From the IMG/VR virus record IMGVR_UViG_3300005289_000016, positions 186,001 through 250,000 of that record: a stretch of DNA of 64,000 nt; one strand, 5' to 3'. Numbering within the stretch: position 1 is the first letter of the stretch; each line of letters opens with the position of its first letter. A program made the translations under genes and the position numbers. This document shows, piece by piece, positions 5,252 through 63,692 of the stretch. A model generated the notes under the pieces. It saw only the letters and a list, made by a program, of their open reading frames with translations. It did not search any database and was not told the DNA's origin.

Positions 5252-5282
5252 CCTACCCTATCCCCATGCTAAGGAGCATGTC

Positions 5283-5939: not shown

Positions 5940-6241
5940 TCCAAGTATATCACGAAGAGAACGGCCTGATCTTCCGTAAGCACGAGGCCGACACCGGGAT
6001 CAGCTACATCGCTGTTCCCATCGAAGAACTGGAACCAGAGGAGCCCTTGAAAGGCCTTCTGGTTCGTCACGGTAATCCGCACACAGGACAGTGTGGTTAC
6101 TACCCGCTGTCCTTACTGCTTACCACTCCTGACAAACGTTACGAGATCGCCAGCAAACAACACAAACGTCCACCAAACGAAAACTGGGTACAACGTATCC
6201 TGTCCGACCTGAAATGTGAAGGCTTGAAACTGGTTCACTGA
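5936..6241 (+). CDS. hypothetical protein (101 aa)
   Basis: ATGA overlap with the previous stop codon. Confidence 0.7.
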   Translation: MIQVYHEENGLIFRKHEADTGISYIAVPIEELEPEEPLKGLLVRHGNPHTGQCGYYPLSLLLTTPDKRYEIASKQHKRPPNENWVQRILSDLKCEGLKLVH

Positions 6242-6290
6242 CGGCATAAGGAGAGGACCCCATGGGGTCCTCTCCAGTGCTTTCTTTTTT
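6242..6290. terminator. bidirectional terminator
   Basis: CGGCATA, then GGAGAGGACCCC-AT-GGGGTCCTCTCC and a T tract, between convergent genes. Confidence 0.78.
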
Positions 6291-6292
6291 CT

Positions 6293-7399
6293 TTATTTGA
6301 CCGAACGGTCGATGTACTTGATGATTGCCACAGCCGTCTTATAACGCTCGAGCATATCGATGATGCCCCAGGTCCACTTCTCAGGATCGCCTTGGAAGTA
6401 GAAACGGTCGTAGAAATCTTCGTACAGGCTGTAGTCCGACTCGTAGATCCACGCACTGAACTCAGAGCCGTCTTCGAAGTCCAGCCAGGATAGGTCGCGC
6501 AGAAGTTTTACCGACGGGTCCCACTCTCGGTCCGACAACATCTCTTTGACCAGTTTGGCACCGTACAGGACATCTTCCTTGCTCAATGCAGGTAGGGTGG
6601 CCTGTGGCTTGACTTCCGGGATGGGCTTGGTATCCACATACCCGTTTTCATCAATAAAGATGTTGAGGTTCTTGATACTGGACGTCCCCATCTTTGGAAG
6701 CTTGGGTACCGGATCAGGGATCTTGTTCAGTTCCTCAACTGCTTTACGTACGACTTCCAGCGCGCCTTCGTCACCTTCTTCCTTGCCTTTGACAGCGGCA
6801 TGGCAACGCTTTTCGATAGCCTGGACTTGGTTGTCCATTGACTTGAGTACCTGACCCCATGCACGACAGAACTTATCTACCGAATCATGGGCGACCTTGA
6901 TATTCAGTAGCGCGCCTTTGCCGATGGTGTTGTTGACCGTGAAGTATGGGCTGATATCAGAGGCTGGAACATCACCTTCCACGAACTTCTGCTTGTCAAG
7001 CCATGAGGAACTGAGGTAGGTCTTCTCGAGTTCTTTGAGGAACTTGGCGATTTCGTTACGGTGCTCCTGATTCCATTTCTCTTCTTCGGGAATGGATTTT
7101 GGTTTACCCTTCTTGCCAAAGATAGTGGAGATGACGCTGCCAAGACTTTCCATGGCTGGTCGCTCGCCTTCAGGCAACAGACCACTTACCAACTGCACCA
7201 CGCCTTCTTGCGCAGCAATGTTCTCTGGCATATCGCGACTGATCTGGATAGCCAGAGAGCGAGCTTTATGCAGGGCCTCGTTACGGCATTCGTCACGCCG
7301 GTTGATCTCTTCGATCGACTCGAGTGACGCCAGAAGACCCTTACTGACTTGTCGAGCATCTGATACGATGTATTGACTGAGGATGTTGTGTTTCATCAT
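6293..7399 (-). CDS. probable virion head protein (proteolytically processed type)
   Basis: N-terminal ASLES, AAQEG and AMESL motifs match the S/A/G-x-E cleavage sites of phiKZ-type prohead protease substrates; start 7399 or 7396. Confidence 0.6.
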   Translation of the reverse strand: MMKHNILSQYIVSDARQVSKGLLASLESIEEINRRDECRNEALHKARSLAIQISRDMPENIAAQEGVVQLVSGLLPEGERPAMESLGSVISTIFGKKGKPKSIPEEEKWNQEHRNEIAKFLKELEKTYLSSSWLDKQKFVEGDVPASDISPYFTVNNTIGKGALLNIKVAHDSVDKFCRAWGQVLKSMDNQVQAIEKRCHAAVKGKEEGDEGALEVVRKAVEELNKIPDPVPKLPKMGTSSIKNLNIFIDENGYVDTKPIPEVKPQATLPALSKEDVLYGAKLVKEMLSDREWDPSVKLLRDLSWLDFEDGSEFSAWIYESDYSLYEDFYDRFYFQGDPEKWTWGIIDMLERYKTAVAIIKYIDRSVK

Positions 7400-7437
7400 C
7401 GATCCTTAAAAGGTGGGGACCCGAAGGCCCCCGGTAG

Positions 7438-46500: not shown

Positions 46501-47427
46501 CCTGAGGGTGGTGAGGCTGCTGATCCTGCATTGGCAGACGTTGATGCACCGGTTGACCCAGATGCTGATCCTGACGCGGCTCCAGAGGTTCCTGATCTGG
46601 ATGCTGAGCCAGGTGAACCTACTGATCCGGATCTGGACATTCCAGGACCAGACGCAGAGCCTGCTACTCCAGAGGCACCAGCAGAACCGGATGCTGACGC
46701 ACCGATCCCTGATGTAGAACCAGATGCTGAACCTGCACCTGAAGTCGACCTTGACGCCCCTGAGCCAGAGGCCGATGCAGCCGCTCCTGATGCAGAACCG
46801 GTTGATCCGGACACTGCTCCTCAGGATGGTGATGTAGAAGCTGTACCTGACACCACGCTGGGCGGTAACAACCTTGATGTAGCGGATCTGGATGCTGCGG
46901 ACACTGCTGCTGCTGAGGTTGATGCTGAGAACCCAGACTTGGCTCCTGAGCCACCTGTGGAAGAGACCGCTGATGCTGAACCTGCGGAGCTGGACATCCC
47001 TGACCCAGATGCTGAACCGACCGACCCTGTCGATCCAGAAGCGCCTGTAGAAGAGGAACCAGCTGAGGTTGATCCTGATGCCCCAGTGGTAGAAGACACT
47101 GATCCGATAGATCCGGATGCAGAGCCTACTGACCCCGTTGATCCTGACGTGGACCCAGTAGACCCTGTTGATCCAGTCGATCCTGATGCACCGGTTGAAG
47201 AACCAGAGCCTGAGGATGGATCTGATCCAGTAGAGCCTGCTCCTGAGGTAGATCCGGATGCCGATCCCGATGCTCCAGTAGTTGAGGAGGAAGAGGAGGA
47301 ATCCGAAGAGGATAAGGAAGCCAGCAAGAATAAGCGTAAAGCTGATGCGGCTATCAAAGCGCTGAAGCTCCCTAACGAAGGGGGCATTCTTGATGGACTG
47401 CCTGACAACCCTGCACCTAAGGTGTAA
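43522..47427 (+). CDS. portal-like protein (phiKZ gp129 type) with a long Asp/Pro-rich C-terminal extension
   Basis: About 890-aa globular part plus about 400-aa low-complexity tail; GAGG RBS. The portal call is from synteny and size, not from a sequence search. Confidence 0.65.
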   Translation: MTDEVRRFTRFATNRSIPNEVKAAISKLGADPHGPGNQRKNMRLPDGRVLAHVANTTIGNIRDARNLFQVLPDMDYARQIVNSATISPGDLTDTKVLYTIKDASMDSNLSGPLLRKVQEFFDNSYRIRPLLQPILNDVLFETGSYPILIMPESSIDRIINADNYGGVSMESAVETLDGHLRQETDDKGNYVPWGILGNSGNAPAKVDSYTGVSFESLSFGHDRTIGNWDGEVKVSNFKVSLEQLLVDVEENKEARTKLTEASTKLVKLVEGKGSTIQVTDNLSILKRPMVVDAKRKIAVRRIYGGKLHQRASLESRAQSGDKEAMRNLAAVERSMYQKRRYQHVPVQPLLTHAQTGMDTYGHPLVMHLPSESVIPIHVPGNPSEHVGYYVMLDIDGNPINIADQSSYIDDIRSQMNNVDSYASQIIQQARRGFDGSGGMQNEIVDELGKVYSDTVERDLLARLRSGALSGNYELGKTENINRMMFARHMKGQKTVMLFVPPEMMTYIAFDYNEFGVGKSVLEDGKILGSIRASIMLANTLATLNNAVGGKTIEIELDPEDEDPVSTVEFMLSEHAKVNSQGFSKIIGSTHPLGLADQIQNHGVNVVVSGNSRYPETKFNVNQREGQNKPVDADFEETMRRRHIQMFGLSPEVMEGINQTDFATTVVQNNLMLLKRVIQNQEKFEPFLTDFVRRYVLNSGIFLTEMRQLITDNKQYLPEHITQDPALSGDEGLQVDAFLYEFIEALCVGLPAPEVGDIKKSMDSFDAYSEALDKVIDAYLNEEMFAADTSIGMEELIPNIKAVVKAEFQRRWLRHNNVMPELDVFNTVTEEEGSPVFDLLEATVEHVDGLNNSISEYVKRVVKAAKRRAKVLEKIATEKADLETAKNSATDAATGGDGGLGDGTDPTLDADPNADPSLDGGDGMDFDTDPNADPDADPDLADPNADPDADPNADPMADLDADPDADPADPDAADPNADPAAELGDASDVATLDAPEGGEAADPALADVDAPVDPDADPDAAPEVPDLDAEPGEPTDPDLDIPGPDAEPATPEAPAEPDADAPIPDVEPDAEPAPEVDLDAPEPEADAAAPDAEPVDPDTAPQDGDVEAVPDTTLGGNNLDVADLDAADTAAAEVDAENPDLAPEPPVEETADAEPAELDIPDPDAEPTDPVDPEAPVEEEPAEVDPDAPVVEDTDPIDPDAEPTDPVDPDVDPVDPVDPVDPDAPVEEPEPEDGSDPVEPAPEVDPDADPDAPVVEEEEEESEEDKEASKNKRKADAAIKALKLPNEGGILDGLPDNPAPKV
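46200..47315 (+). repeat. coding low-complexity D/P/A/E repeat ending in EEEEEESEEDK
   Basis: Seen directly in the translation (DPDADP, PVDPD, EPTDP units). Confidence 0.85.
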
Positions 47428-52628: not shown

Positions 52629-53369
52629 ATGAAACCAGAACGCTTGATCGTAGAGTGCCGAGGCAATCAAATCGGTCTCGAAGAACGCCTCCTCATGCAG
52701 CATGCTGAGGCCCACGACATCCCGGTGAAGATCTATTACGAGAAGCACATGGCTCGTAACCAGATCCCACTGTCATCCACTGATCTGGTAGCGGGGAGTG
52801 TCCCTTTCATCAAGCATGCATTGCGTCAGTTCGGAAAGGAATTGCCTCCTGAGGATTCTTACCCTGAATGTTTGCACCATCACCTGCACCGAAAGGTTGC
52901 AAAGATGGATACGCTGCGAGATGCAAAGAACCTGATCGACGATGTCGGCTCGCACTTTGTTAAACCCGTCACCCTGAAACGTTTCACAGGCTTTGTCACC
53001 TGCGACTCCATGGACCCTCGATTCAATGGGGCGTCGGATAAAATGCCAGTGTGGGTAGGTAAGGTAGTTGAGTTCGTCAGCGAATGGCGATGCTACGTGG
53101 CTAACGGTTGCCTGCTCGATATACGTTTTGCCGATCATGGCGGGGATCGTAAGATCAAGCCTAACCGCGGCATCATCCTAGATGCTGTACGTGACCTGAC
53201 AGAGTGCGCAGCGCCTGCCGGTTACGCGGTGGACTTCGGTGTACTGTCTACTGGGCAGACTGCTCTGGTTGAACTCAACGATGGATTCTCCATCGGTGCG
53301 TACGATGGCATTGAACCTGGCATCTATTGGGAAGTCATCCAAGCCCGTTGGCAAGAGCTGATTGGCTAA
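52629..53369 (+). CDS. ATP-grasp domain protein (DUF4343/R2K-like)
   Basis: FVKP...KRFTG, VEFVSEWRCYV and AVDFG...LVELND motifs. Confidence 0.78.
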   Translation: MKPERLIVECRGNQIGLEERLLMQHAEAHDIPVKIYYEKHMARNQIPLSSTDLVAGSVPFIKHALRQFGKELPPEDSYPECLHHHLHRKVAKMDTLRDAKNLIDDVGSHFVKPVTLKRFTGFVTCDSMDPRFNGASDKMPVWVGKVVEFVSEWRCYVANGCLLDIRFADHGGDRKIKPNRGIILDAVRDLTECAAPAGYAVDFGVLSTGQTALVELNDGFSIGAYDGIEPGIYWEVIQARWQELIG

Positions 53370-53422: not shown

Positions 53423-54148
53423 TTACGCCACCCGAAGGTTGTTCGGGTGCAGGCCGTCCACGTACTTCTGAGCCACCTTGGCAGCAGCTTCAGCTTTGGT
53501 GATCAGACCATCGCGGTTGGCATCCAGGCCCTTGTTCTGAAGGTAGGCCTTGGTCTTGGTGTTCGCTTCACTGAACAGCACGTAGTCTTCAGGCTTGCCC
53601 ACAGCAGTAGGTAGAAGTATCCTCATGTAGATGTCACTGAGGGTCTTCAACTTGCCAGTGTACGGCTTGAAGAAGTTGTAGACGTAGTCGAGTTGTTGCT
53701 CGGCAGTCATCTTCAGCAACGCAGGGAGCGAGGTCTTCGAATCCTTCGCTGCCGCAGCGCCGAACTGAATCAGACCGTAGTACGGAGCACCTGCACCGTT
53801 GGCCACGGTAGGACTGAAGGTACCACCGGTCTCGAACGCCATGCAAGACATCAGCGTATCGGTACCGTCCCATGGCAAGGCCAGATCGGTAGCGATCTTG
53901 TTGGTCTTGCGCAGGAACTCATCGGAGACCTTGGCAGACCACGCAGGAGCCTTGCAGTAAGCGAACAGGGTCGCATTGATACCATCGGCAGCCGTCGATG
54001 GCTTCGACATGTTCACGGCCTTACGGCGAGCGTTCAGGAAGGCACCGTGGGATGCCCCACCCCAGATACCGTCGATGACGCCAGCGTAGAAACCCAGCGC
54101 TTTGAGGTTACGCTGAAGTTCCTTCAGTTGTTCTTTAGTTGCCGCCAT
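53423..54148 (-). CDS. modular endolysin (N-terminal peptidoglycan-binding domain plus lysozyme/transglycosylase-like domain)
   Basis: LQRNLKALGFYAGVIDGIWG (PG_binding_1); MAFETGGTFSP...GLIQF; EF-hand-like DANRDGLITKAE. Confidence 0.85.
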   Translation of the reverse strand: MAATKEQLKELQRNLKALGFYAGVIDGIWGGASHGAFLNARRKAVNMSKPSTAADGINATLFAYCKAPAWSAKVSDEFLRKTNKIATDLALPWDGTDTLMSCMAFETGGTFSPTVANGAGAPYYGLIQFGAAAAKDSKTSLPALLKMTAEQQLDYVYNFFKPYTGKLKTLSDIYMRILLPTAVGKPEDYVLFSEANTKTKAYLQNKGLDANRDGLITKAEAAAKVAQKYVDGLHPNNLRVA

Positions 54149-54782
54149 TGTTGATACCCTCGAGGTAGGCTTGCATGGCCGGGTAGCAGTCCCGGAGTTT
54201 GGCGAAGGAGTAGTTGCTCATCTGCGCCTGGATCATCTGGTCATCACGACCCGTCAGACGCCAGTCAAAGCGAAGACCTTCTTGCACCAGAGTCAGAGGG
54301 GTGTTGGCACCGGCCTCGTACTTGGTGATGTGGACCGCGTTGGCGTAATCCCACGGCGACTTCTGTAGCAGACGCCATGCCGCAGAGCTGGCCACTTGTT
54401 CCGCCGATTCCTGAGCAAAGGACAGCAGGGACATTGGCTCAGCCAGCACCTTGTTGTTCAGGAAGTCGTTGACGATGGCATCTTCAAGGTACAGCAGCTT
54501 AGGCGTGATGGTGCCCTTGGTGCGGAAGTACAGCTTGGTGATACCTGGACGCTGGCGAGGGATGTACGGTTGAACATCACCGCCCAGATGCGGAGCAGGT
54601 TGACCTTCTGGCCACCATTCGATGGTGTAGCCGACGATGGCGTATTGCAGATCGCTCAGGTAGTTGAAGACAGTGGCGTCTTTGATGCGGCAGTTGGCAC
54701 GCAGTTGCACACCGGAGTTGTCCAGCAGGCGAATGGTGCGGAAGTGACCGCGGTCCGGACCTGTGTAGAGTTCGTCAGCCAT
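54135..54782 (-). CDS. hypothetical protein of the radical-SAM cassette (215 aa)
   Basis: Starts 2 nt after the oxygenase stop codon; overlaps the endolysin start by 14 nt. Confidence 0.75.
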   Translation of the reverse strand: MADELYTGPDRGHFRTIRLLDNSGVQLRANCRIKDATVFNYLSDLQYAIVGYTIEWWPEGQPAPHLGGDVQPYIPRQRPGITKLYFRTKGTITPKLLYLEDAIVNDFLNNKVLAEPMSLLSFAQESAEQVASSAAWRLLQKSPWDYANAVHITKYEAGANTPLTLVQEGLRFDWRLTGRDDQMIQAQMSNYSFAKLRDCYPAMQAYLEGINNGGN

Positions 54783-54784
54783 GG

Positions 54785-55336
54785 TTACGCCTTGAAGTGG
54801 AAGTCATTGATCAGCGACAACCGCAGTTGCGCAGGGTTAGCAGCAACGCTGTGCTGGATGTAGCTCGGCATCAGCCACAAGTCACCAGCTTTCGGCGAGA
54901 TGTAGTGTTCGCCGAAGTGCGAGTCACGCACAGCACGCGGATAACCACGCGATGCATTGAAACGCGGGTCGATTAGCGACATGCCGGCTTGGGAATCTTC
55001 CGGGTAGTACACACTGGTCAGGCAGGAGTTGCCATGTAGGTGTGCACTCAGACCTTCCTGATGATCGAAGGCCTTGCCGAAGGTGTCGATCATGACTTCT
55101 TTCGGCATGACGTTGAAGATCTTCTGGATGTAGTCTTCGGCCACAGGACGCAGGATCACGTCACGGAAGTGAGTCAGGGCCGGGAACATCTCAGGGGTGA
55201 TTTCCAGCGGAGTCTGCGAGTTCCGAGGGGACATGCAGTGCAGCTGATGGATCTCATCAATGAGGGCCGCGTTATCCACTTGGTCCAGCAGATTGACGTG
55301 ACCGATCTCGATTTTCCATGGTTGGAAGAGTTTCAT
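54785..55336 (-). CDS. 2OG-Fe(II) oxygenase-like protein (TIGR02466 / 2OG-FeII_Oxy_5 type), paralog 3
   Basis: HLHGNSCLTSVYY, IDPR, PKAGDLWLMPSYIQHSV, RLSL. Confidence 0.85.
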   Translation of the reverse strand: MKLFQPWKIEIGHVNLLDQVDNAALIDEIHQLHCMSPRNSQTPLEITPEMFPALTHFRDVILRPVAEDYIQKIFNVMPKEVMIDTFGKAFDHQEGLSAHLHGNSCLTSVYYPEDSQAGMSLIDPRFNASRGYPRAVRDSHFGEHYISPKAGDLWLMPSYIQHSVAANPAQLRLSLINDFHFKA

Positions 55337-55350
55337 TGAACGTCCCTATG

Positions 55351-55908
55351 TCAGTTGGGGTCGAGGAAGTAATCGTTGACGAAGGAGAGGCGTAGCTCAT
55401 CCCGAACGGGGTTAACCGAATGCAGGATGTAACTTGGGATGATGTACACATCCCCAGCCTTAGGCTCGATCCGGTAGTTACCGAAGTGTCCACGACTGAT
55501 GTGGCTTGGATAACCACGAGCAGCATTGCCCCGCGGGTCAACCAAGACCAGACGTGACGCAGCATCAACCGGATACATCACCACAGTCAGACTCGACATA
55601 GCGTGGATGTGATGTTCGAGGTCTGCTCCGTCCTGGATACATACACATTGCGACAAAATGTCGACATCCGCAGCTTCAAGGCTCAGGTCGAACTCAGTGC
55701 GAATGTACTCAAGGACTTTCGGAGTGATGCAGCGATCACGCAGGTCCACCAGATCCGCTACCTCAGGAGCGTTGGGATCAACGGATACGAAGCTGCCGTT
55801 GACTTGCATGCTGTTGGCCAAGATAGCACCAACGATGAGATCAAGGTCCACCTGATCAGCAATGTTGAACTTACCGATGGTGGTGGTCCAAGGTTGGATA
55901 CGTTCCAT
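55351..55908 (-). CDS. 2OG-Fe(II) oxygenase-like protein, paralog 2
   Basis: HIHAMSSLTVVMY, VDPRG, PKAGDVYIIPSYILHSV, RLSF. Confidence 0.85.
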   Translation of the reverse strand: MERIQPWTTTIGKFNIADQVDLDLIVGAILANSMQVNGSFVSVDPNAPEVADLVDLRDRCITPKVLEYIRTEFDLSLEAADVDILSQCVCIQDGADLEHHIHAMSSLTVVMYPVDAASRLVLVDPRGNAARGYPSHISRGHFGNYRIEPKAGDVYIIPSYILHSVNPVRDELRLSFVNDYFLDPN

Positions 55909-55910
55909 GG

Positions 55911-56474
55911 TCAGAGATCCGTGATGACGTAGTATTCGTGCAGCAATGAGAGACGGGTAGCCTCGTCGACATTGGGCACACTGTGTTGGACATAGCTCGG
56001 GAAGATCAGCACATCGCCCGCTTTCGGACTGACTTTGAAGTTGGCAAAGTGCGGGCTATTGCGCATGCGCTTGGGATAGCCACGACAAGCATTGCCTTTC
56101 GGGTCGAACATGACCAACGAATTGGTCGAGTCGCTTGGGTAGCAGATGGCAGAGATCACAGAGCCAGGATGGTAGTGCGGAAACAGACCTTGCCCTTCAG
56201 GAATCCACTTGCCGTTGGTGTCGACGTGGAATTCATTGATGTTGAACGCAAAGTGTTCCTTGGCGTACTCCATCACCTTGGGTGTAATGATCCGGTCCCG
56301 CATCTCGAGGATGATCGGGAAGAGTTCCCTGTTCTTGATGACCAGTTGACGATCGTCTTCTCCGTCAGTCATTGCAAACAACGACAGGACTTCATCAGCA
56401 TACGCTGCCATGTCGAACTGATCGGCTACGTTGAACCGCACCAATGGAACAGACCACAGGTTGAGTGTTTCCAT
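55911..56474 (-). CDS. 2OG-Fe(II) oxygenase-like protein, paralog 1
   Basis: HYHPGSVISAICY, FDPKG, PKAGDVLIFPSYVQHSV, RLSL. Confidence 0.85.
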   Translation of the reverse strand: METLNLWSVPLVRFNVADQFDMAAYADEVLSLFAMTDGEDDRQLVIKNRELFPIILEMRDRIITPKVMEYAKEHFAFNINEFHVDTNGKWIPEGQGLFPHYHPGSVISAICYPSDSTNSLVMFDPKGNACRGYPKRMRNSPHFANFKVSPKAGDVLIFPSYVQHSVPNVDEATRLSLLHEYYVITDL

Positions 56475-56476
56475 GG

Positions 56477-56908
56477 TTACTCCGTGAGGGATGCGATCCC
56501 TTCCTCAGTGCACTCGAGCAGACAGTACTTGACCGACTTGGGAGCCCAGCCGCCTTTGATCCAGTCCGGCATGTCTTTCAACCGTTTTAAGATCGCTTCG
56601 TACGTTTCTGGATCGCAACTGTACGGGACGAAGTACGGGTCCTGATTAAGGAACAGGTCCTTGTCGTCGAGGATGGTCCGAACAGGCAGGTTGTAGAGAT
56701 CACACAGCGTGAAGGCGTAGATGATGGCCACGGCGTAACTCTTAGCCGGGTACACCAACGGGAATTCAGCCTTCTGGAAGTACGCCAAGGCGTTCTCTAC
56801 TAGCTCACCACTTTCGACGAACTCCATCAGGGAGAAATCGTCAGTGTGCTCGGTGACCAGCAGATTATAGAGCTGCTGGTATTCTTTATAAGGGAGAGTG
56901 TGCATCAT
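56477..56908 (-). CDS. hypothetical helical protein of the cassette (143 aa)
   Basis: GAGGA RBS; tightly packed between the radical-SAM-like and oxygenase genes; YPAKSYAVA and LFLNQDPYF segments. Confidence 0.75.
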   Translation of the reverse strand: MMHTLPYKEYQQLYNLLVTEHTDDFSLMEFVESGELVENALAYFQKAEFPLVYPAKSYAVAIIYAFTLCDLYNLPVRTILDDKDLFLNQDPYFVPYSCDPETYEAILKRLKDMPDWIKGGWAPKSVKYCLLECTEEGIASLTE

Positions 56909-57950
56909 GTTCCTCTTTGGTCATCAGATCCCAGCGGTTCTTCATGTCGATGAGGCATTTTTCAGAACCCGTTTCTTCCATCAGGCGCTGAACGTCACAC
57001 CGTGAACAACTATCGAGGAAACAGCAGTCGCCACACTCAGGATGTGCACTGTATTTCTCAAGGTTACGGTAGTACGCTTCTTGCCGGTCTGCGATCACAG
57101 CTTCGGCAGTCCACGGCTTTGCCAGCTTGAAGTTGTCTTTGTAGATGGTGAGGTTCTCTACCAACACAATGGTCGAATAGAGGGAGCCGCCACGGTAGGT
57201 GAATTCATACCCTTCCTTGTTGCCTGGAATCAATGGTACAAATTCAACGGTATTCACACGCTCTTTTGCAAAGTCAGCGAATACCTTCAGATCTCGCTTG
57301 AACCGCTCGGCATTCATGATGTTGTCGAAGCCTTGGCGGGCTGCCACAAAGGGGAACTCAATCACCTTGTGGATACCTTCGCCGAAGTCCATGTAGCGGA
57401 TCTTCTTGAACGCCTCGTCGCTGAAGTGAGCAAGGTTACCTTCCTCGACGTTGATGGTGGCATACAGGCGACTGAACTCTGCTTTCTTCATCATGCCTTT
57501 GAATCGCGCAAGGCGATCCTTGAGGATGGCGACGTATTTGTCGTTGCAGATATTCTTCAAGGTGATGGGTGTGCCAACGTTGACATACTTGCCGGGCATC
57601 AACTCATCCATCAACTCAGCGACTTCTTCCAGATGGCGATCATGGAGCATCGCCATGTTGATCGTCAGCACTTTAAAGTGAGCAGCGATCTTGCGAAACG
57701 ATGGGTGGCGCAATACCTGAAACCCGTTGTCCGCACTGGTAATGTCGGTCGGCCCTAACTTGAGTTCCAGCAGACGGAAGTCGTGGGCTTTCAAGTCTTC
57801 GAGCAACGCTTCCAAATCAGCCGTGTCTTCATCAGACATGTCGAAGGGAGCGAAGTTCTTCTCGACAGTACAGCCGGGGCAGCTATAGCCACACCCCTTG
57901 AGGACTTCCAGACCCAAGTTAAAGGTCTGGGATACACGTTCACTGAACAT
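56886..57950 (-). CDS. radical-SAM-like protein, non-canonical (CxxxCxxC = CGYSCPGC)
   Basis: N-terminal Cys triad; GPTD in place of GGE; C-terminal CGDCCFLDSCSRC Cys cluster. Confidence 0.7.
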   Translation of the reverse strand: MFSERVSQTFNLGLEVLKGCGYSCPGCTVEKNFAPFDMSDEDTADLEALLEDLKAHDFRLLELKLGPTDITSADNGFQVLRHPSFRKIAAHFKVLTINMAMLHDRHLEEVAELMDELMPGKYVNVGTPITLKNICNDKYVAILKDRLARFKGMMKKAEFSRLYATINVEEGNLAHFSDEAFKKIRYMDFGEGIHKVIEFPFVAARQGFDNIMNAERFKRDLKVFADFAKERVNTVEFVPLIPGNKEGYEFTYRGGSLYSTIVLVENLTIYKDNFKLAKPWTAEAVIADRQEAYYRNLEKYSAHPECGDCCFLDSCSRCDVQRLMEETGSEKCLIDMKNRWDLMTKEEHDAHSPL

Positions 57951-58968
57951 ACTGCAACCCCACTAGGCAGTCTTTGATTGACATGTGTTGCATGATCGCG
58001 CTGATGCCCTTCTCAGAGCAGCTACTGATGTAGGGGCACGTCATACAGGGCGTGTCCTTCAAGTACTCCAGAGACGCATCCAGAGCCTTCTGACGCACTG
58101 TCAAGAGGTTCTCCATGGTCCATGGCTTAGGGATGGTGAACTCGTCGTCTAGGAACGGGCAATCATCCTTCAAGAAAGGCACCCAGTACAGCTTACCGTC
58201 GGTGTACAGCAAGTTGCACATGGTCCCAGTGTCATAATGCAGGTCTGGGTTACGTCGACGTTCATCCTGACCTTCAAGCTCAGAGTAGTACTGCGTGATG
58301 CGGTAACTCATGCGCTTGATCTGCTCACTCACCATCAGGGTCTTTTGTTTAACCCGACCGTAAGGGATGTTCAGGATGTCATCTTTGTCCACAGGGAACT
58401 CAACGTCAAACCCAGCCCGCATGAACTCCTCGAACTTGTCGTCCACGGTGTCCTGCGTGCAACTGATAACAAAGCCAGCCTCATTCAAGTACGCCGATTG
58501 CATGGTGTTCTTGATGTGGGAAAGCTTCTTACCCACCATGTTGCCGAACTTCTCATTGCGGAAGAAGTACGGCGCAGCAGGGATCAGGAAGCGGATAGGC
58601 TTACCTGGCACTGATTGATCGATCTCAGCACACATACTCGTGTACTTGTCCATGTTCGTCTCAAGGAACGCTGCGTTGAACGTCACCTGATGGAACATCT
58701 GAGCCATCTCTTGGAACTCAGGATGGGCCATGACCTCATCTTTGTTGCTGGCAGTCATGTAGTCGGTAGGGCCGACACCCAGATCGAACGCCACGTAACC
58801 TGCTGTGGTCATTTCCGTCAGCAGGTCCTTCAGGGCAGCGAGGTCATTGACATCACCGCCCATGGCCTTGTCGATCATGCATCCGGGACAGACGTGTCCG
58901 CACCCTCGGAATAGATCAAGCGTGATTTCCAGCCGCTGTCTGTGCTGGACGAAGTGTGGAGATTCCAT
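57940..58968 (-). CDS. radical-SAM-like protein, non-canonical (CGHVCPGC)
   Basis: N-terminal Cys triad; GPTD; C-terminal CMTCPYISSC; paralog of 56886-57950. Confidence 0.7.
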   Translation of the reverse strand: MESPHFVQHRQRLEITLDLFRGCGHVCPGCMIDKAMGGDVNDLAALKDLLTEMTTAGYVAFDLGVGPTDYMTASNKDEVMAHPEFQEMAQMFHQVTFNAAFLETNMDKYTSMCAEIDQSVPGKPIRFLIPAAPYFFRNEKFGNMVGKKLSHIKNTMQSAYLNEAGFVISCTQDTVDDKFEEFMRAGFDVEFPVDKDDILNIPYGRVKQKTLMVSEQIKRMSYRITQYYSELEGQDERRRNPDLHYDTGTMCNLLYTDGKLYWVPFLKDDCPFLDDEFTIPKPWTMENLLTVRQKALDASLEYLKDTPCMTCPYISSCSEKGISAIMQHMSIKDCLVGLQYVQ

Positions 58969-59879
58969 TGGTCAAGTAACCCCTTGAAGCCGTTACAGGA
59001 GTGAGTCAGATCTTTCACCTCCCGAAGATGCTCAGAGAGGCAGTGACCCATGTAGTTACAGGAAGAGCAGTGACCATTGGTCGTGACTGCTTCTTTTTCT
59101 TTGGCACACCACGCAAGGTAACCAGCAACGCCATCCACATCGAGGAAGAACTCGTTGTCATTGGCATCGAACTCAAGCACAGCCAGAGAGCCCGTCGGTG
59201 TGATGTAGAGGTGATCGTCACTGAAGGCATTACGCGTACCTTCAGCCGCCTCTTTCACTTGCCGCTCATTCTCAAAGTAGAACTCTCGCTCAGGGTGTTC
59301 AATGACAGCCCAGACGAAACGCTCAAACTCATCAAACGGCACGTTCTGGGCATTGGCCTGGTTCGTGCTGTAGGGTTTGATCTCGACGTCCTTTGCATTG
59401 GCCAGCATGTTCATGGTCTGCACGAACGTATCGACGCTCACGGTGTCCAGGAACTTGCGAGAGGCCAACGTCAGGATGGTGAAGGGACGCGTCAGCATGA
59501 AAAGGTTGTTCAACACCCGGTCATGCATCTCCCGTGCTTCAAAGTCATACGACACGCTGAGGTCGAAGTCCAAGTCCTCGGTGATCTCGTTGAGCAACGT
59601 GAGGTTCGAGACCAACACGATATCATCCAGACCGTACCGGTGCAGGATCTCTTTCATCTCCAGCAGGTACTCGGGAGGCAACAGCAGGACTTCCCCACCG
59701 TAGATGTCGATGTGCCCAACGTCATAGTGCTCAAGGATCTCCAGCAGCCTTTCTTCAAAGACGCCCAAGTCCATGCGTGTCCGATCACCCAACTGCTCTG
59801 GTGTGAGATAACAGAACTCACAGCGCAGGTTACAGTAGTAAGACGGGTTTACGCTGAGGTTGATTTTTGGCTTAGGCAT
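58875..59879 (-). CDS. radical SAM/SPASM-type protein
   Basis: CNLRCEFC, YGGE, C-terminal CSSCNYMGHC...C; 3' end overlaps the next gene by 94 nt. Confidence 0.88.
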   Translation of the reverse strand: MPKPKINLSVNPSYYCNLRCEFCYLTPEQLGDRTRMDLGVFEERLLEILEHYDVGHIDIYGGEVLLLPPEYLLEMKEILHRYGLDDIVLVSNLTLLNEITEDLDFDLSVSYDFEAREMHDRVLNNLFMLTRPFTILTLASRKFLDTVSVDTFVQTMNMLANAKDVEIKPYSTNQANAQNVPFDEFERFVWAVIEHPEREFYFENERQVKEAAEGTRNAFSDDHLYITPTGSLAVLEFDANDNEFFLDVDGVAGYLAWCAKEKEAVTTNGHCSSCNYMGHCLSEHLREVKDLTHSCNGFKGLLDQWNLHTSSSTDSGWKSRLIYSEGADTSVPDA

Positions 59880-60274: not shown

Positions 60275-61363
60275 TTAGCCTTTCGCGATGAGTTGGACAG
60301 ATTCGTCCACGTAAGGTGTTGGGATCAGGTATTCAGTCTGACCGTTCAATTCAATGATGCGAGGAGCCAGCGTCTTCATCTTCTTGCAATGATGTTCAGC
60401 CAGACCCAGTCGTTTAGTGTCAGCCACCGTCTTACGGCAACCGTTGCACACAGGGAACATCGGACACTCGTTACAGGCGTCCTTCATCGACCACAGTTCT
60501 TCCTGATTGCGCAGTGGAGTGAAGAACTCACCCGCCATCTCTTTCTCGAAGTCGATGGGGTACTTGAGGTCGTCACCAAAGGCTCCACAGGAGAAATACT
60601 GGTTGCCCGGTTGCAGACTGCGGATACCGCCATCGCAATCACGGGACAGAGGGCAGATGGTGTTCTGCGTCGACAGGCGCTTGACCAATTGCTTGGTGTT
60701 GAACTCCCACTGCATGAGACCAGCGTCGTAGATTTCAAGGTACTTCTCGTACATGTCAGCCTGAGTGTACATGGTCTCAGCGTTGCCCATGGAGACGCCC
60801 TTGTTGAGCACCACAGGACCAGAAGCTACCGCGTAGTTAACCTTGGCCTCTACGCCCATCCGCTGAGCCAGACGCACCGTGTCAAGGACCGTGTGCTCAT
60901 TGCTCTTATCGACGACTGCAATGAAGTCAGGACGATAGCCAATGCGCTCAAGGAACAGATCACTGACTGCCCAGAACTCTTCTTCAGTGAACGGCGTCTT
61001 ATCGCCCTTGAGGCGTGCATCGCCGTACTGGAACGAGGTCGTCACACCCAGACGTGGATGACGGAACAACTCTTCCCACATCTCAGGCTTCTTGTAGAAA
61101 GGCCAGAGGTTGCTGGTGAAGGAGATCGACGCATCGGACTCCAGACGGTCTAGGATCGCGATCAGGTCCCAGTAATACTGCACAGGCATCATGAGAGGGT
61201 CACCGCCGTTAACGATGATGGTGCGCGTCTCAGGGTACCGTACGATGAACCGTTCCACATCCTCCAGACTCACGACCTCATTGGCGTCATCGGTCAGGTA
61301 GGTGCTGGAGCAAAAGGTGCACTTGAAGTTACACCGCTGCGTCGGCTTTAGGATCAGGTCCAT
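60275..61363 (-). CDS. radical SAM/SPASM domain protein (362 aa)
   Basis: KPTQRCNFKCTFC, NGGDP, SPASM-like CPLSRDC...FSC...CNECPMFPVCNGC...C. Confidence 0.92.
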   Translation of the reverse strand: MDLILKPTQRCNFKCTFCSSTYLTDDANEVVSLEDVERFIVRYPETRTIIVNGGDPLMMPVQYYWDLIAILDRLESDASISFTSNLWPFYKKPEMWEELFRHPRLGVTTSFQYGDARLKGDKTPFTEEEFWAVSDLFLERIGYRPDFIAVVDKSNEHTVLDTVRLAQRMGVEAKVNYAVASGPVVLNKGVSMGNAETMYTQADMYEKYLEIYDAGLMQWEFNTKQLVKRLSTQNTICPLSRDCDGGIRSLQPGNQYFSCGAFGDDLKYPIDFEKEMAGEFFTPLRNQEELWSMKDACNECPMFPVCNGCRKTVADTKRLGLAEHHCKKMKTLAPRIIELNGQTEYLIPTPYVDESVQLIAKG

Positions 61364-61544
61364 CGGTGTTCCCCTTGTTCTCGTATTTGCCCGTCCAGAC
61401 ACCAAGGTAATCTCGACGGAATTGTTCGTGCTCTGGACTACGCGCTTCCTCTAACTTCTTACGAAGCCAGGTATCGTCACCCAGCTTACGAGGGAACCGA
61501 GGTACACGTGGTAGGCGACGCATTGGTAGGATGGGGTCGGTCAT
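61329..61544 (-). CDS. small basic protein (71 aa, MTDPILPMRRLPRVPRFPRK...)
   Basis: GGAG RBS before the ATG at 61544; follows an AT-rich intergenic region. Confidence 0.5.
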   Translation of the reverse strand: MTDPILPMRRLPRVPRFPRKLGDDTWLRKKLEEARSPEHEQFRRDYLGVWTGKYENKGNTDGPDPKADAAV

Positions 61545-61629: not shown

Positions 61630-62628
61630 CTACAAGACGACTTTGAACATCTCTCGGATAGAGCAGACCTTGGACTTGCTGTCCAAGACCTTGTCGTGCA
61701 GGAAACAACGCAGCCCACACCGGGAGTAGTACTCGCACTCAAAGCAACCGTAATGTTCCACGAATGCAACCTCAGCAGCGTCCTTGGCAATCAAGCCTTC
61801 AGTCTCGTCTAAGATCGCATCCTTACCTGCTTCAGACCAACAGGTACTGATCACGCCATCCTTGTTGATGATCTTGGTGGAGCGACACGTGGTCTCATTG
61901 ATCACGTTGTTCTTCCAGTCCTTGATCGGATACGAGTTCGGGTACTTGTTGTTCAGCGCAATGTACATCGTGCTGATCAGGTCTTCGTCAGGTTGGTGAT
62001 GCAGGTACATCTGACTGGGGATGTAATGATCGAAGTACACATCGTACCGTTCACACATCTCAGCAAACTCCTCGCCTTCTTTACCGTCAAGGAATGTCTG
62101 GATGTTCTGTTTGGTGATCACCACGTTGACCGTCTGGACCAGATCACCCAGCGTCTCGAGGTTCTTGAAGAACAAGGCTCGTTGAGCAGGATTGAATCGA
62201 CCAGCGGGGTCATAAGACGTGGCCAGCCAGACACGCTCATCAATCACCCGAAGGCGTTCGATAAGGTGCCTGACTCGGTCAGTGTTGTGATAAACGAGGT
62301 TCGTGCCAAAGACCAGTTTGATGTGCTTGAAGTGACTCAAGGCCATCTTGCCGGCTTGGTAGTAAGCTTCGAAGAGTTCGTCGCTCACCTCGTTCATGAA
62401 CAGTTCACCGCCTGTGAAGTTAACCACCATGGCTGTGTCTGGATGTGTAGTCGCCAACAACTTAGCAACCTTGTCGATCACTAGATCCCCGTCGAGACCC
62501 ACTTTGGAATCGTGGTCCTGGTGGCAGAATGAGCAGCGCATGTTGCACAGCTCGAACAGAATCAGGTGAGCTTCTTTCCACTTACCTTTCTTCTCACGCA
62601 GGATGTCTACAACAGGGATCAGGTTCAT
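61630..62628 (-). CDS. radical SAM/SPASM-type protein (332 aa)
   Basis: CNMRCSFC, TGGE, C-terminal TTC...STC...CFECEYYSRCGLRC...C. Confidence 0.88.
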   Translation of the reverse strand: MNLIPVVDILREKKGKWKEAHLILFELCNMRCSFCHQDHDSKVGLDGDLVIDKVAKLLATTHPDTAMVVNFTGGELFMNEVSDELFEAYYQAGKMALSHFKHIKLVFGTNLVYHNTDRVRHLIERLRVIDERVWLATSYDPAGRFNPAQRALFFKNLETLGDLVQTVNVVITKQNIQTFLDGKEGEEFAEMCERYDVYFDHYIPSQMYLHHQPDEDLISTMYIALNNKYPNSYPIKDWKNNVINETTCRSTKIINKDGVISTCWSEAGKDAILDETEGLIAKDAAEVAFVEHYGCFECEYYSRCGLRCFLHDKVLDSKSKVCSIREMFKVVL

Positions 62629-63692
62629 TACCAGTTCGCTCCCTTGACGCAGTCCTTCAGGACGTCGACTTGTTCCGACAGGATGTACCGCACGAGGTTC
62701 TCGTCGTACTTGCCGGAGTCAGCGTTAGGCAGAGCCAGACGCTTGGCACCTTTGAACATGGTCAGCACCCGCTGCTTCAACACCTCAGGATCAAGGAGGT
62801 CTTCATCGGACGTGAGCAACTGATAGACCAGTCGAGTACGGCCCGCAGTCGGACCCTCGTCGCAATGATCCAACACGGTGATCAGTTCCAGAAGCAGGCC
62901 CTTGATCCACACGTCCGTTGGCTTGTTGTCGAACAAGTTCGGCTGGAGGAACATGGTGCTGTTCAGGTAGTGGAAGTTCAACGTACCTTCGAACACGCTC
63001 TGCCCATTGAGCAGGGTGTTCATGTCAGCACCGGCGAAGTCCCAGGCTTCCGGGTTGGCGATCTGACGACCCCATACGTCGAGAGCATCGTAGCCGTTGG
63101 CCAGCGCGATGCGACGCAGGATGTTCTTCAGAGTCTTTGGCAGCTTGCCCACACGGTTGTCGGTGAACAGACGCATGATGCGCCATTCCAGCGACAGCGA
63201 GTCTGGGTTTTCAGTAACCAGCTCACCGAACACTTCCTGATGAGGATCTTCGAACGCGAACAGTTCTTGAACGACCTGCTCGTTGATGGTCACTTCGTTC
63301 AGGATGTTGGTGGTCGGCTTGTGCATGTTCAGCAGCGACACCTGGAAGGTAGCCTTCTTGCAGAGCATGATCCAGCGGAACACGTCGATCGTGACGTTAG
63401 GCATTACTGCCTTGACCAACATGGTGTACAGGCGCAGGTAGGTCTGACCGTCGACGTAGACGAACACCTTGTCGTCTTGGCTGAAGATCTTGTCGAACAG
63501 GTCCTTGAACACATCGCCTTCAAGCGCGTCCAGAGACACCGCATAGCCAAGTTGCTCAGAACTCTCCTCGTACTCCGCCGGGTGATACTCAAAGCCCACA
63601 CGTGGACTGATGGTGGCGTACGGAATACGCTTACGTGAGATACGGGATTCGATCTCGACGTAGATTCGGTCACGCAGATGGTACATGTTCAA
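62628..63692 (-). CDS. hypothetical protein of the cassette (354 aa)
   Basis: Stop/start overlap with the radical-SAM gene; GGAGA RBS; no recognised motif. Confidence 0.78.
   Translation of the reverse strand: MNMYHLRDRIYVEIESRISRKRIPYATISPRVGFEYHPAEYEESSEQLGYAVSLDALEGDVFKDLFDKIFSQDDKVFVYVDGQTYLRLYTMLVKAVMPNVTIDVFRWIMLCKKATFQVSLLNMHKPTTNILNEVTINEQVVQELFAFEDPHQEVFGELVTENPDSLSLEWRIMRLFTDNRVGKLPKTLKNILRRIALANGYDALDVWGRQIANPEAWDFAGADMNTLLNGQSVFEGTLNFHYLNSTMFLQPNLFDNKPTDVWIKGLLLELITVLDHCDEGPTAGRTRLVYQLLTSDEDLLDPEVLKQRVLTMFKGAKRLALPNADSGKYDENLVRYILSEQVDVLKDCVKGANW

What the first reader, a model, noticed from the sequence alone, without database searches (positions are those of the whole stretch)
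56886..58968. Tandem non-canonical radical-SAM paralogs (CxxxCPGC, GPTD)
Both proteins keep a CxxxCxxC triad (CGYSCPGC, CGHVCPGC), but have Gly where canonical enzymes have the aromatic residue that stacks on the SAM adenine. Both replace the GGE motif with GPTD and keep a C-terminal Cys cluster. The shared deviations suggest a duplicated subfamily under selection rather than random decay. They could be SAM-independent Fe-S proteins, scaffolds or regulatory partners of the three canonical enzymes, or have unusual chemistry.
Basis: partly seen in the sequence, partly recalled or inferred. Interest (0 to 1): 0.65.

Follow-up and report, generated by a model that had tools for sequence, protein, structure and literature searches.

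The report
Divergent radical-SAM pair in phage cassette
The two genes are real, ancient paralogs of an uncharacterised but strongly conserved branch of radical-SAM/SPASM-type iron-sulfur enzymes. They sit in a jumbo-phage gene cassette that probably modifies a small protein with a Cys-His repeat tail, and their odd motifs look like a family signature rather than decay.

Summary
Two overlapping minus-strand ORFs (P0001 56886-57950, P0002 57940-58968) carry CGYSCPGC/CGHVCPGC, GPTD and a C-terminal Cys cluster, and are paralogs (25% identity, E 1e-33).

- **Fold.** Both AlphaFold models (pLDDT 87.5 and 91) match radical-SAM/SPASM peptide maturases, best anSMEcpe (Z 14.7 and 14.9 over about 300 residues).
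- **Family.** They belong to about 199 clusters (50% identity), mostly from jumbo-phage-sized contigs. In 127 full-length members seven Cys are invariant (CxxxCxxC plus Cx2Cx5C...C). Gly before the third Cys, P-T-D, N75 and R205 are at least 90% conserved.
- **Precedents.** E. coli NrdG, an annotated activase I know as an active radical-SAM enzyme, has the same CxxxCPGC. Published structures show GGE is variable, and NifB has a Gly-Pro cis-peptide there.

The motifs therefore do not argue for loss of SAM chemistry. "Duplicated subfamily under selection" is supported. "SAM-independent scaffold" is neither supported nor excluded.

The window is a phiKZ-like phage (276 kb; nearest GenBank match Pseudomonas phage pPa_SNUABM_DT01). 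The pair lies in a conserved cassette: cupin, four canonical rSAM, three 2OG oxygenases, unknowns, and a 179-aa protein ending in three CH pairs at a four-residue period plus RGRR. That protein is the likely substrate. No member has been characterised.

The parts
56886..57950 (-). P0001, 354 aa, P0001-type member of the CxxxCxGC/GPTD radical-SAM-like family
   Evidence: ORF and translation. AF2 model has pLDDT 87.5 and pTM 0.87. Best structural match is anSMEcpe 4k38_B, Z 14.7, 302 residues aligned. 42 homolog clusters found.
57870..57893 (-). P0001 Cys triad C20-x3-C24-x2-C27 (CGYSCPGC), predicted ligands of the radical-SAM [4Fe-4S] cluster
   Evidence: The three Cys are invariant in 127 of 127 family members. 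Gly26 is conserved in 93%. The triad lies in the loop after strand b1 (residues 9-14) of the model.
57744..57755 (-). P0001 GPTD (residues 66-69), positional equivalent of the GGE motif
   Evidence: It directly follows strand b2 (59-65) in the model. It is 39 residues after the third Cys, against 38 in canonical P0003. Conservation in the family: G 89%, P 92%, T 92%, D 99%.
56955..57035 (-). P0001 C-terminal Cys cluster C306-x2-C309-x5-C315 ... C332, predicted single auxiliary [4Fe-4S] site
   Evidence: All four Cys are invariant in 127 of 127 members. Global hhalign places them on the four Cys invariant in the canonical neighbours, P0003 C271/C274/C280/C295. C310 and C318 are not conserved family-wide.
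57940..58968 (-). P0002, 342 aa, P0002-type member of the same family
   Evidence: ORF and translation. AF2 model has pLDDT 91.0 and pTM 0.89. Best structural match is anSMEcpe 4k36_B, Z 14.9, 293 residues aligned. 100 homolog clusters found.
58879..58902 (-). P0002 Cys triad C23-x3-C27-x2-C30 (CGHVCPGC)
   Evidence: C23, C27, G29 and C30 are invariant in 34 P0002-type sequences.
58762..58773 (-). P0002 GPTD (residues 66-69)
   Evidence: G66, T68 and D69 are invariant; position 67 is P or A. The motif follows strand b2 (59-65) of the model.
57967..58047 (-). P0002 C-terminal Cys cluster C308-x2-C311-x5-C317 ... C334
   Evidence: All four Cys are invariant in 34 sequences.
58875..59879 (-). P0003, canonical radical SAM (CNLRCEFC, GGE) with the same four-Cys C-terminal pattern
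   Evidence: Pfam PF04055 E 6e-9 and phrog_1802 E 6e-37. Cys pattern.
60275..61405 (-). P0004, canonical radical SAM/SPASM (CNFKCTFC, GGD). The true start is probably Met15 at 61363, as in the DT01 orthologue.
   Evidence: PF04055 E 1e-11 and phrog_1802 E 7.5e-53.
61630..62628 (-). P0005, canonical radical SAM/SPASM (CNMRCSFC, GGE)
   Evidence: PF04055 E 1.8e-6 and phrog_1802 E 1.6e-33. The DNA is 81% identical to DT01.
62628..63692 (-). P0006, conserved cassette protein of unknown function
   Evidence: No family hit. An orthologue lies at the same place in DT01.
56477..56908 (-). 143-aa protein (phrog_20737, unknown function) that travels with the family
   Evidence: phrog_20737 E 1e-35. Homologs lie next to family members in L007 (47% identity, E 8e-45) and in the bacterial-looking contig L009 (E 4e-16).
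54785..56474 (-). Three tandem 2OG-Fe(II) oxygenase paralogs (55911-56474, 55351-55908, 54785-55336)
   Evidence: Pfam PF13759 E 6e-13, 3e-8 and 3e-10. PF13759 genes are also next to family members in L007 and L009; L008 has a weak PF13640 (2OG-FeII_Oxy_3) hit instead.
54135..54782 (-). 215-aa conserved cassette protein, unknown function
   Evidence: An orthologue is present in DT01. No family hit.

Best explanation
P0001 and P0002 are two anciently duplicated members of an uncharacterised, mostly phage-borne branch of the radical-SAM/SPASM-type maturases.

Proposed mechanism:
- Each protein is predicted to fold as the (beta/alpha)6 radical-SAM core.
- Each is predicted to hold one [4Fe-4S] cluster on the invariant CxxxCxGC loop.
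- A second, fully Cys-ligated cluster sits on the invariant Cx2Cx5C...C motif. This corresponds to the Aux-II site of SPASM enzymes; the Aux-I ligands are absent.
- The GPTD loop after strand beta-2 takes the place of GGE. I infer that its Gly-Pro replaces the usual Gly-Gly cis-peptide that presents backbone groups to SAM and the cluster.
- The small Gly before the third Cys is the arrangement also used by NrdG.

The most likely function is SAM-dependent radical modification of a protein or peptide substrate, as part of a conserved cassette. The cassette contains a JmjC-like cupin, four canonical rSAM/SPASM enzymes, the pair, a 143-aa protein, three 2OG-Fe(II) oxygenases and several unknowns. 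The best substrate candidate is the cassette's 179-aa protein. Its C-terminal tail, three CH pairs at a four-residue period followed by RGRR, is conserved across all cassettes that carry it.

Shown: fold, family, conservation and synteny. Inferred: cluster binding, SAM cleavage, substrate identity and chemistry.
For: **Fold.**
- AF2 models have pLDDT 87.5 and 91.0.
- Every top PDB match is a radical-SAM enzyme, led by peptide/protein maturases. anSMEcpe gives Z 14.7 and 14.9 over 302 and 293 residues; next come ChlB, SuiB, SkfB, CteB and EpeE.

**Homology to canonical radical SAM.**
- hhalign of the 127-member family against the canonical neighbours gives probability 94.6%, E 7e-8. The global alignment puts the C-terminal Cys on the neighbours' invariant Cys.
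- 27 of 127 members hit Pfam PF04055, best E 5.5e-6.
- 5 members hit NrdG TIGR02491, best E 5e-7.

**Selection.**
- There are 199 clusters at E <= 1e-3.
- Seven Cys are invariant.
- G26, P67, T68, D69, N75 and R205 are at least 90% conserved; Y139 and N167 are over 85%.
- G26, PTD, N75 and N167 lie just after core strands of the model, and R205 lies a few residues after strand b6. That is the face where radical-SAM active sites lie (combined with established knowledge of the fold).

**Precedents for the 'deviations'.**
- E. coli NrdG has GCVHECPGC.
- GGE variability and the NifB Gly-Pro cis-peptide are documented in PMC10267522.

**Cassette.**
- The same gene order occurs in DT01, SURPRISE13 and metagenomic contigs L007 and L008.
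- The 179-aa protein's tail is conserved in 39 of 39 sequences.
Against: - P0001 and P0002 themselves give no Pfam, NCBIfam or PDB sequence hit.
- Gly-Gly of GGE is replaced, and no characterised enzyme has GPTD.
- Residues invariant in the canonical neighbours (N92, L93 and S110 of P0003) are not kept in the family.
- I could not superpose coordinates. The GPTD = GGE equivalence rests on secondary structure and spacing; hhalign itself shifted this loop by six residues.
- One bacterial-looking contig (L009) carries two family members with the 143-aa protein and 2OG oxygenases, but no Cys-His-tail protein within 10 kb. The substrate may therefore be something else.
- No expression or biochemical data exist.
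Confidence: 0.6

Rival explanations
1. P0001 and P0002 are Fe-S proteins of radical-SAM ancestry that no longer cleave SAM. They would serve the canonical enzymes of the cassette as electron-transfer partners, substrate-holding scaffolds or regulators.
For: - Neither protein reaches any curated radical-SAM model.
- The Gly-Gly of GGE and the aromatic residue are both replaced, family-wide.
- Four canonical rSAM enzymes in the same operon could supply the radical chemistry.
- A family of pseudo-SAM/SPASM proteins is already recognised by NCBIfam (TIGR04347, listed).
Against: - The known pseudo-SAM family has lost the Cys triad (my background knowledge; one search gives only its name). Here the triad is invariant in 127 of 127 members.
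- Most of the other best-conserved residues cluster at the strand ends that form the active-site face. That pattern is expected of an enzyme rather than a scaffold.
- Both 'deviations' occur in active enzymes (NrdG; NifB and others).
- SURPRISE13-like phages keep one copy and L008 keeps four. Such variation fits substrate-site specialisation better than a fixed partner role.
- The co-fold of P0001 with P0002 gave no answer and counts neither way.
Confidence: 0.2
2. The pair are active radical-SAM enzymes, but the substrate is not the Cys-His-tail protein. With the 143-aa protein and the 2OG-Fe(II) oxygenases they would form a module acting on a small molecule, sugar, nucleotide or another virion protein, for example a tail-fibre or baseplate component.
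For: - The sub-module (family member + 143-aa protein + PF13759 oxygenase) recurs in contig L009 among glycosyltransferases. No Cys-His-tail protein lies within 10 kb there.
- In the phage, the cassette is flanked by tail-fibre-like genes and a baseplate-hub/lysozyme-like gene.
- Structural matches also include viperin, MoaA and BlsE/DesII-type small-molecule enzymes, at Z 9-12.
Against: - The best structural matches are protein/peptide maturases.
- The Cys-His-tail protein co-occurs with family members in five deeply divergent cassettes.
- Neither protein has an N-terminal extra domain.
- L009 was inspected only over 21 kb.
Confidence: 0.15
3. The two ORFs are decaying duplicates (pseudogene-like remnants) of the neighbouring canonical radical-SAM genes.
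For: Only the lack of curated-family hits and the altered motifs.
Against: - Both reading frames are intact.
- About 199 divergent clusters keep the same signature.
- P0002-type sequences have 56 invariant columns among 34 sequences.
- Both models are confident.
- The two types form deep, separate clades.
Confidence: 0.02

Closest known systems
anSMEcpe (anaerobic sulfatase-maturing enzyme, PDB 4K36-4K39) and other SPASM/twitch peptide maturases (ChlB, SuiB, CteB, SkfB, EpeE)
   Same: - They share the overall fold across nearly the full length: Z 14.7 and 14.9, about 300 aligned residues.
- Both have an N-terminal CxxxCxxC loop.
- Both have a C-terminal Cx2Cx5C...C motif preceded by a beta-hairpin with a conserved Gly.
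   Different: - Sequence identity is only 10-15%, with no sequence-level hit.
- Only four C-terminal Cys are present, enough for one auxiliary cluster. From my knowledge of the anSME structure these correspond to the Aux-II ligands, and the Aux-I ligands are absent.
- GPTD replaces GGE.
- Gly replaces the aromatic residue before the third Cys.
NrdG, anaerobic ribonucleotide reductase activase (E. coli b4237; NCBIfam TIGR02491)
   Same: - It has an identical cluster-loop pattern, G-C-x3-C-P-G-C.
- NrdG models are two of the only three NCBIfam families that any family member touches: 5 and 3 of 127 members, best E 5e-7.
   Different: - NrdG is 154 aa, with no C-terminal Cys-cluster domain, and it keeps GGD.
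- Family members score far below the NrdG cut-off.
- This phage genome has no NrdG match.
NifB and other radical-SAM enzymes with non-GGE loops (analysis in PMC10267522)
   Same: - A Gly-Pro cis-peptide occupies this loop in NifB.
- Thr or Asp is accepted at the third GGE position.
- 22 of 48 solved enzymes lack Gly-Gly.
   Different: - In NifB the Gly-Pro is shifted by one residue.
- The four-residue GPTD signature is not described there.
- No homology beyond the superfamily level is implied.
Pseudomonas phage pPa_SNUABM_DT01 gp057/gp058 (QTH80257, QTH80258)
   Same: - These are orthologues of P0001 and P0002 in the same cassette and order.
- They are annotated 'radical SAM protein' and counted among 'six radical SAM genes' in PMC8541153.
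   Different: - P0001 is only 31% identical to gp057, which has GPVD.
- There is no experimental work. The paper only guesses at DNA repair or host metabolism.
HXS anti-phage system (HxsA His-Xaa-Ser repeat effector matured by rSAM HxsB/HxsC with HxsD; PMC13128918)
   Same: - The logic is the same: a protein with short His-x-Ser-type repeats encoded beside several radical-SAM maturases.
- The canonical neighbours weakly hit HxsB/HxsC models.
   Different: - HXS is bacterial and defensive.
- The phage protein has three CH pairs at a four-residue period at its extreme C-terminus, and does not match TIGR03979.
- P0001 and P0002 do not match HxsB/HxsC.
- The phage cassette adds cupin and 2OG oxygenases.
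- This is an analogy only, not membership.

Membership tests
Radical SAM superfamily (PF04055) | CxxxCxxC triad in the loop after strand beta-1 | tested here: met
   P0001 C20/C24/C27 and P0002 C23/C27/C30. The triad is invariant in 127 of 127 family members and lies after b1 in both models.
Radical SAM superfamily (PF04055) | Partial (beta/alpha)6 TIM-barrel core | tested here: met
   Six strand-helix units appear in both AF2 models. Z is 14.7 and 14.9 to anSMEcpe, and all top matches are radical-SAM enzymes.
Radical SAM superfamily (PF04055) | Sequence match to the curated profile above its gathering score | tested here: not met
   P0001 and P0002 give no hit at E <= 1. 27 of 127 relatives hit weakly, best E 5.5e-6. 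Profile-profile comparison to the canonical neighbours gives probability 94.6%.
Radical SAM superfamily (PF04055) | GGE (Gly-rich) SAM-binding motif at the end of strand beta-2 | tested here: inconclusive
   The literal motif is absent. GPTD occupies the same place, directly after b2 and 39 residues from the third Cys against 38 in P0003. Published structures tolerate E/T/N/D at position 3 and a Gly-Pro cis-peptide. No coordinate superposition was possible.
Radical SAM superfamily (PF04055) | Binding and reductive cleavage of SAM at the unique iron | not testable with these tools
   This needs anaerobic reconstitution, EPR and 5'-deoxyadenosine detection.
SPASM domain (TIGR04085 / PF13186) | Seven-Cys motif Cx9-15Gx4C ... 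Cx2Cx5Cx3C ... C binding two auxiliary clusters | tested here: not met
   Only Cx2Cx5C plus one downstream Cys are conserved. The hairpin Gly (G255) is kept but its flanking Cys are absent, and there is no conserved x3-C. Canonical neighbour P0003 shows the same reduced pattern.
NrdG-type activases (TIGR02491) | Score above the curated cut-off (126 bits); small single-domain protein partnered with NrdD | tested here: not met
   P0001 and P0002 give no hit. 5 of 127 relatives hit, best E 5e-7. The genome has no TIGR02491 match. Only the CxxxCPGC loop is shared.
HXS system maturases HxsB/HxsC (TIGR03978/TIGR03977) and effector HxsA (TIGR03979) | Match to the equivalog models | tested here: not met
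   P0001, P0002 and the 179-aa protein give no hit. The canonical neighbours score 18-27 bits against cut-offs of 268-370.
Pseudo-SAM/SPASM proteins (TIGR04347) | Radical-SAM-like fold that has lost the cluster-binding Cys triad | tested here: not met
   The triad is invariant in this family, and there is no TIGR04347 hit for P0001 or P0002. That this family lacks the triad is my background knowledge of the model's description.

The most novel reading that the evidence does not exclude
The CxxxCxGC/GPTD proteins are a new mechanistic lineage of radical-SAM enzymes. They would have a proline-locked cis-peptide in place of Gly-Gly and an Aux-II-only SPASM remnant. Together with the 143-aa protein and PF13759 oxygenases, they would install a previously unknown crosslink or cofactor on the Cys-His repeat tail of a jumbo-phage protein encoded between tail-fibre and baseplate genes. 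That would make it a phage-made, rSAM-matured protein needed for infection, or for countering entry-blocking defences.
Probability: 0.2. Interest if true: 0.8.

Novelty: new variant of a known kind. Interest (0 to 1): 0.45.

Why it matters
**For enzymology.** If these proteins are active, they extend the accepted sequence rules for SAM binding: GPTD for GGE, and Gly for the aromatic residue. They would also define an auxiliary-cluster arrangement (Aux-II only) that curated models do not capture. This explains why Pfam and NCBIfam leave the window's own pair unnamed and why curated models reach only about a fifth of the family.

**For phage biology.** The wider point is the cassette. A block of six radical-SAM-type genes, several 2OG oxygenases and a protein with a strongly conserved Cys-His tail persists across deeply divergent phiKZ-like jumbo phages, next to tail genes. 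Nobody has studied it.

**A timely comparison.** A bacterial rSAM-matured His-x-Ser protein was shown in 2026 to block phage DNA entry (PMC13128918). A phage-side system of similar logic is now a directly testable question.

Tried and rejected
- **Heterodimer or partner idea.** The complex-prediction run of P0001 with P0002 returned 'no answer' (ipSAE 0.00, controls not run). It is no evidence either way.
- **Sequence search of PDB.** Profiles A1 and A5 found only a marginal N-terminal hit to GDGT-MAS (E 0.044).
- **The search for related loci with the 127-member alignment.** The taxonomic range in cellular genomes was therefore not surveyed. Only one bacterial-looking contig (L009) was seen.
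- **PADLOC.** There was no defence-family hit for the pair or the tail protein. The canonical neighbours gave only weak viperin-like hits.
- **HXS membership.** Rejected.
- **Protein atlas for the 179-aa protein.** Nothing usable.
- **Supplement of the RP12/RP31 paper.** It lists a similar rSAM block after tail-fibre-like genes, but gives no virion-proteome information for these genes.
- **Readings of the tail, considered from memory and not pursued.** One is overlapping CX3CH heme-attachment-like motifs. The other is the sulfatase C-x-P/A-x-R formylglycine motif. The spacing and residues do not fit either convincingly.
- **Residue-level superposition on SAM-bound anSMEcpe.** This could not be done because model coordinates are not exposed. 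hhalign's placement of the beta-2 loop is unreliable.
Full report
**1. What is there**

The window is part of a 276,032-bp virus record (window = positions 186001-250000). Several markers show it is a phiKZ-like jumbo phage:
- a major head protein;
- a class I ribonucleotide reductase;
- a helicase;
- phage-type polymerase subunits.

The only GenBank phage with nucleotide similarity is Pseudomonas phage pPa_SNUABM_DT01, at 81% over one gene.

The finding's coordinates hold two minus-strand ORFs that overlap by 11 nt.

| ORF | Coordinates | Length |
|---|---|---|
| P0001 | 56886-57950 | 354 aa |
| P0002 | 57940-58968 | 342 aa |

- They are paralogs: 25% identity over 336 residues, E 1e-33.
- Neither has any Pfam or NCBIfam hit. 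PHROGs places both in phrog_31457, of unknown function.

**2. Fold**

AlphaFold2 models built on 30 and 34 homologs are confident: pLDDT 87.5 with pTM 0.87, and pLDDT 91.0 with pTM 0.89.
- Both show six strand-helix units, then a beta-hairpin, a long helix and the Cys-rich tail.
- Foldseek's significant hits are almost all radical-SAM enzymes.
- The second-look aligner gives anSMEcpe as best match for both: Z 14.7 over 302 residues and Z 14.9 over 293 residues.
- Next come ChlB, SuiB, SkfB, CteB, EpeE, viperins, PqqE and MoaA.

**3. The family and its signature**

Word searches found 42 and 100 homolog clusters, many on contigs of 180-277 kb. A profile search of 1.84 billion representatives found 199 clusters at E <= 1e-3 and 174 at E <= 1e-10.

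Among 146 representatives:

| Feature | Counts |
|---|---|
| Residue before the third Cys | Gly 125, Asp 7, Asn 1, Ala 1; never aromatic |
| Motif 32-40 residues after the triad (mostly 35-38) | GPTD 93; APTD 8; GPVD 8; GATD 5; SPTD 3; GSTD 3 |

In an alignment of 127 full-length members with mean column identity 19%:
- the invariant columns are C20, C24, C27, C306, C309, C315 and C332 (P0001 numbering);
- G26, P67, T68, D69, N75 and R205 are at least 90% conserved;
- Y139 and N167 are over 85% conserved;
- in the model, G26, PTD, N75 and N167 sit just after core strands, and R205 lies a few residues after strand b6;
- that is the face where radical-SAM active sites are built. This last point combines with established knowledge of the fold.

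This is the pattern of a functioning active site under purifying selection, not of decay.

**4. Relation to canonical radical SAM**

- Profile-profile comparison with the canonical radical-SAM proteins of this and related cassettes gives probability 94.6%, E 7e-8.
- A global alignment places the four C-terminal Cys on the four Cys that are invariant in those neighbours.
- 27 of 127 members reach Pfam PF04055 weakly.
- The only NCBIfam models touched are two NrdG models (5 and 3 members, best E 5e-7) and, for a single member, TIGR04053.
- The C-terminal pattern is Cx2Cx5C plus one distal Cys. This is the part of the SPASM motif that, in anSMEcpe, ligates the second auxiliary cluster (my knowledge of that structure).
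- The hairpin Gly is kept, but the Cys that would bind the first auxiliary cluster are missing.
- Canonical neighbour P0003 has the same reduced pattern.

**5. Do the deviations imply loss of SAM chemistry?**

No.
- E. coli NrdG, which is annotated as the class III RNR activase and which I know to be an active radical-SAM enzyme, reads G-C-V-H-E-C-P-G-C. This is the same CxxxCPGC.
- A structural survey (PMC10267522) reports three relevant points:
  - the Gly-Gly of GGE is commonly a cis-peptide;
  - the third position can be Glu, Thr, Asn or Asp, and NifB has a Gly-Pro cis-peptide in this loop;
  - 22 of 48 solved enzymes lack Gly-Gly altogether.
- GPTD follows strand beta-2 directly and lies 39 residues after the third Cys, against 38 in P0003. 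It is therefore the positional equivalent of GGE.
- A Gly-Pro that fixes the cis geometry is a conservative reading. This is inference. I could not superpose coordinates, and hhalign misplaces this loop by six residues.

**6. Duplication history**

A FastTree of 80 family members gives these results:
- P0001-type and P0002-type sequences fall in separate clades, each with 100% local support and a long stem.
- DT01 has one of each.
- The pair in contig L007 is an independent duplication.
- L008 has four copies, and SURPRISE13-like phages have one.

Copy number thus varies from one to four. This argues for site or substrate specialisation rather than an obligate heterodimer. A co-fold of the two gave no answer.

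**7. The cassette**

Reading the minus strand from beyond the window end (locus L005 = genome 249001-262000), the gene order is:
1. Two tail-fibre-like proteins.
2. A JmjC-like cupin.
3. A canonical rSAM/SPASM (CNLDCKHC).
4. A 179-aa protein.
5. A 280-aa protein.
6. P0006.
7. P0005, P0004 and P0003 (canonical rSAM).
8. P0002 and P0001.
9. A 143-aa protein (phrog_20737).
10. Three PF13759 2OG-Fe(II) oxygenases.
11. A 215-aa protein.
12. A peptidoglycan-binding, baseplate-hub-like lysozyme.

The same order is seen in DT01 and, with variations, in SURPRISE13/RSL2-type phages and in metagenomic contigs L007 and L008.

The 179-aa protein ends in three CH pairs at a four-residue period, followed by a basic R-x-R-R terminus.
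- This tail is kept in all 39 sequences examined, including the most divergent cassettes.
- That makes it the best substrate candidate.
- The nearest described analogue of such logic is the bacterial HXS defence system, in which rSAM enzymes mature a His-x-Ser repeat effector (PMC13128918).
- None of the phage proteins meets the HXS family models, so this is analogy only.
- A caveat: contig L009, which looks bacterial, has two family members with the 143-aa protein and PF13759 oxygenases, but no such tail protein within 10 kb.

**8. Prior knowledge**

- GenBank annotates the DT01 orthologues as "radical SAM protein".
- The DT01 paper counts them among six radical-SAM genes, with a generic guess at DNA repair or metabolism.
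- Papers on RP12/RP31 and on S13 merely list the neighbours.
- No paper in the library describes the family signature, the tail protein or the cassette's function.

**9. Verdict**

- The reading "conserved duplicated subfamily" is right.
- The suggestion that the motifs point to SAM-independence is not supported, though only biochemistry can exclude it.
- The pair is best described as a new, uncharacterised variant of radical-SAM/SPASM-type maturases, within a conserved jumbo-phage protein-modification cassette.
- The finding itself is of moderate interest. The cassette as a whole deserves experimental follow-up.

Noticed in passing
L005:1564-2103 (-), i.e. genome 250564-251103, about 560 nt beyond the window end: A 179-aa cassette protein whose last 16 residues form three CH pairs at a four-residue period followed by R-G-R-R. 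The tail is conserved in all 39 homologs examined and in DT01, SURPRISE13, L007 and L008. An N-terminal N-S-G-I-S-W-G-T-N motif is also conserved. It is the likely substrate of the rSAM cassette.
   Followed up: partly
L005:1470-1620 (-): An exact 18-nt repeat (tgccattctaactgtcac). The coding sequence for the tail of the 179-aa protein is partly duplicated about 50 nt downstream, giving the next ORF an N-terminus M-S-C-H-S-N-C-H-A-N. It is not present in DT01. It may be a duplication remnant or a second short tail peptide.
   Followed up: no
window 58875-58968: P0003's reading frame runs 94 nt into P0002, whereas the DT01 orthologues overlap by only 4 nt. Many database gene calls for P0002 orthologues are 312 aa, starting at Met31 just after the third Cys. 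That would delete the Cys triad. The N-terminal 30 residues are strongly conserved, so these short calls look like gene-caller artefacts.
   Followed up: partly
window 56477-56908 (-) with 54785-56474 (-): The 143-aa protein (phrog_20737) and PF13759 2OG oxygenases accompany family members even in a bacterial-looking contig with glycosyltransferases (L009, from GCA_031292385.1). This suggests a portable three-part module.
   Followed up: partly
window 43522-47427 (+): A 1301-aa virion structural protein (phrog_3004). Its C-terminal third is a long, acidic, low-complexity run rich in Asp, Pro, Ala and Glu, with many D-P-N-A-D-P-type repeats.
   Followed up: no
L005:3678-5123 and 5194-7584 (-): Two tail-fibre-like proteins directly upstream of the cassette. 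They carry repeated units of the type N-P-H-x-x-T-K-A-Q-V-G-L-G-x-V-x-N.
   Followed up: no
window 52629-53369 (+): An ATP-grasp-like protein on the opposite strand at the downstream edge of the cassette. It is conserved at the same place in DT01 (gp051).
   Followed up: no
L007:12160-13764: In one divergent cassette, a B12-binding radical-SAM gene is inserted between the 140-aa protein and a 2OG oxygenase. This hints that methylation is part of the chemistry in some lineages.
   Followed up: no
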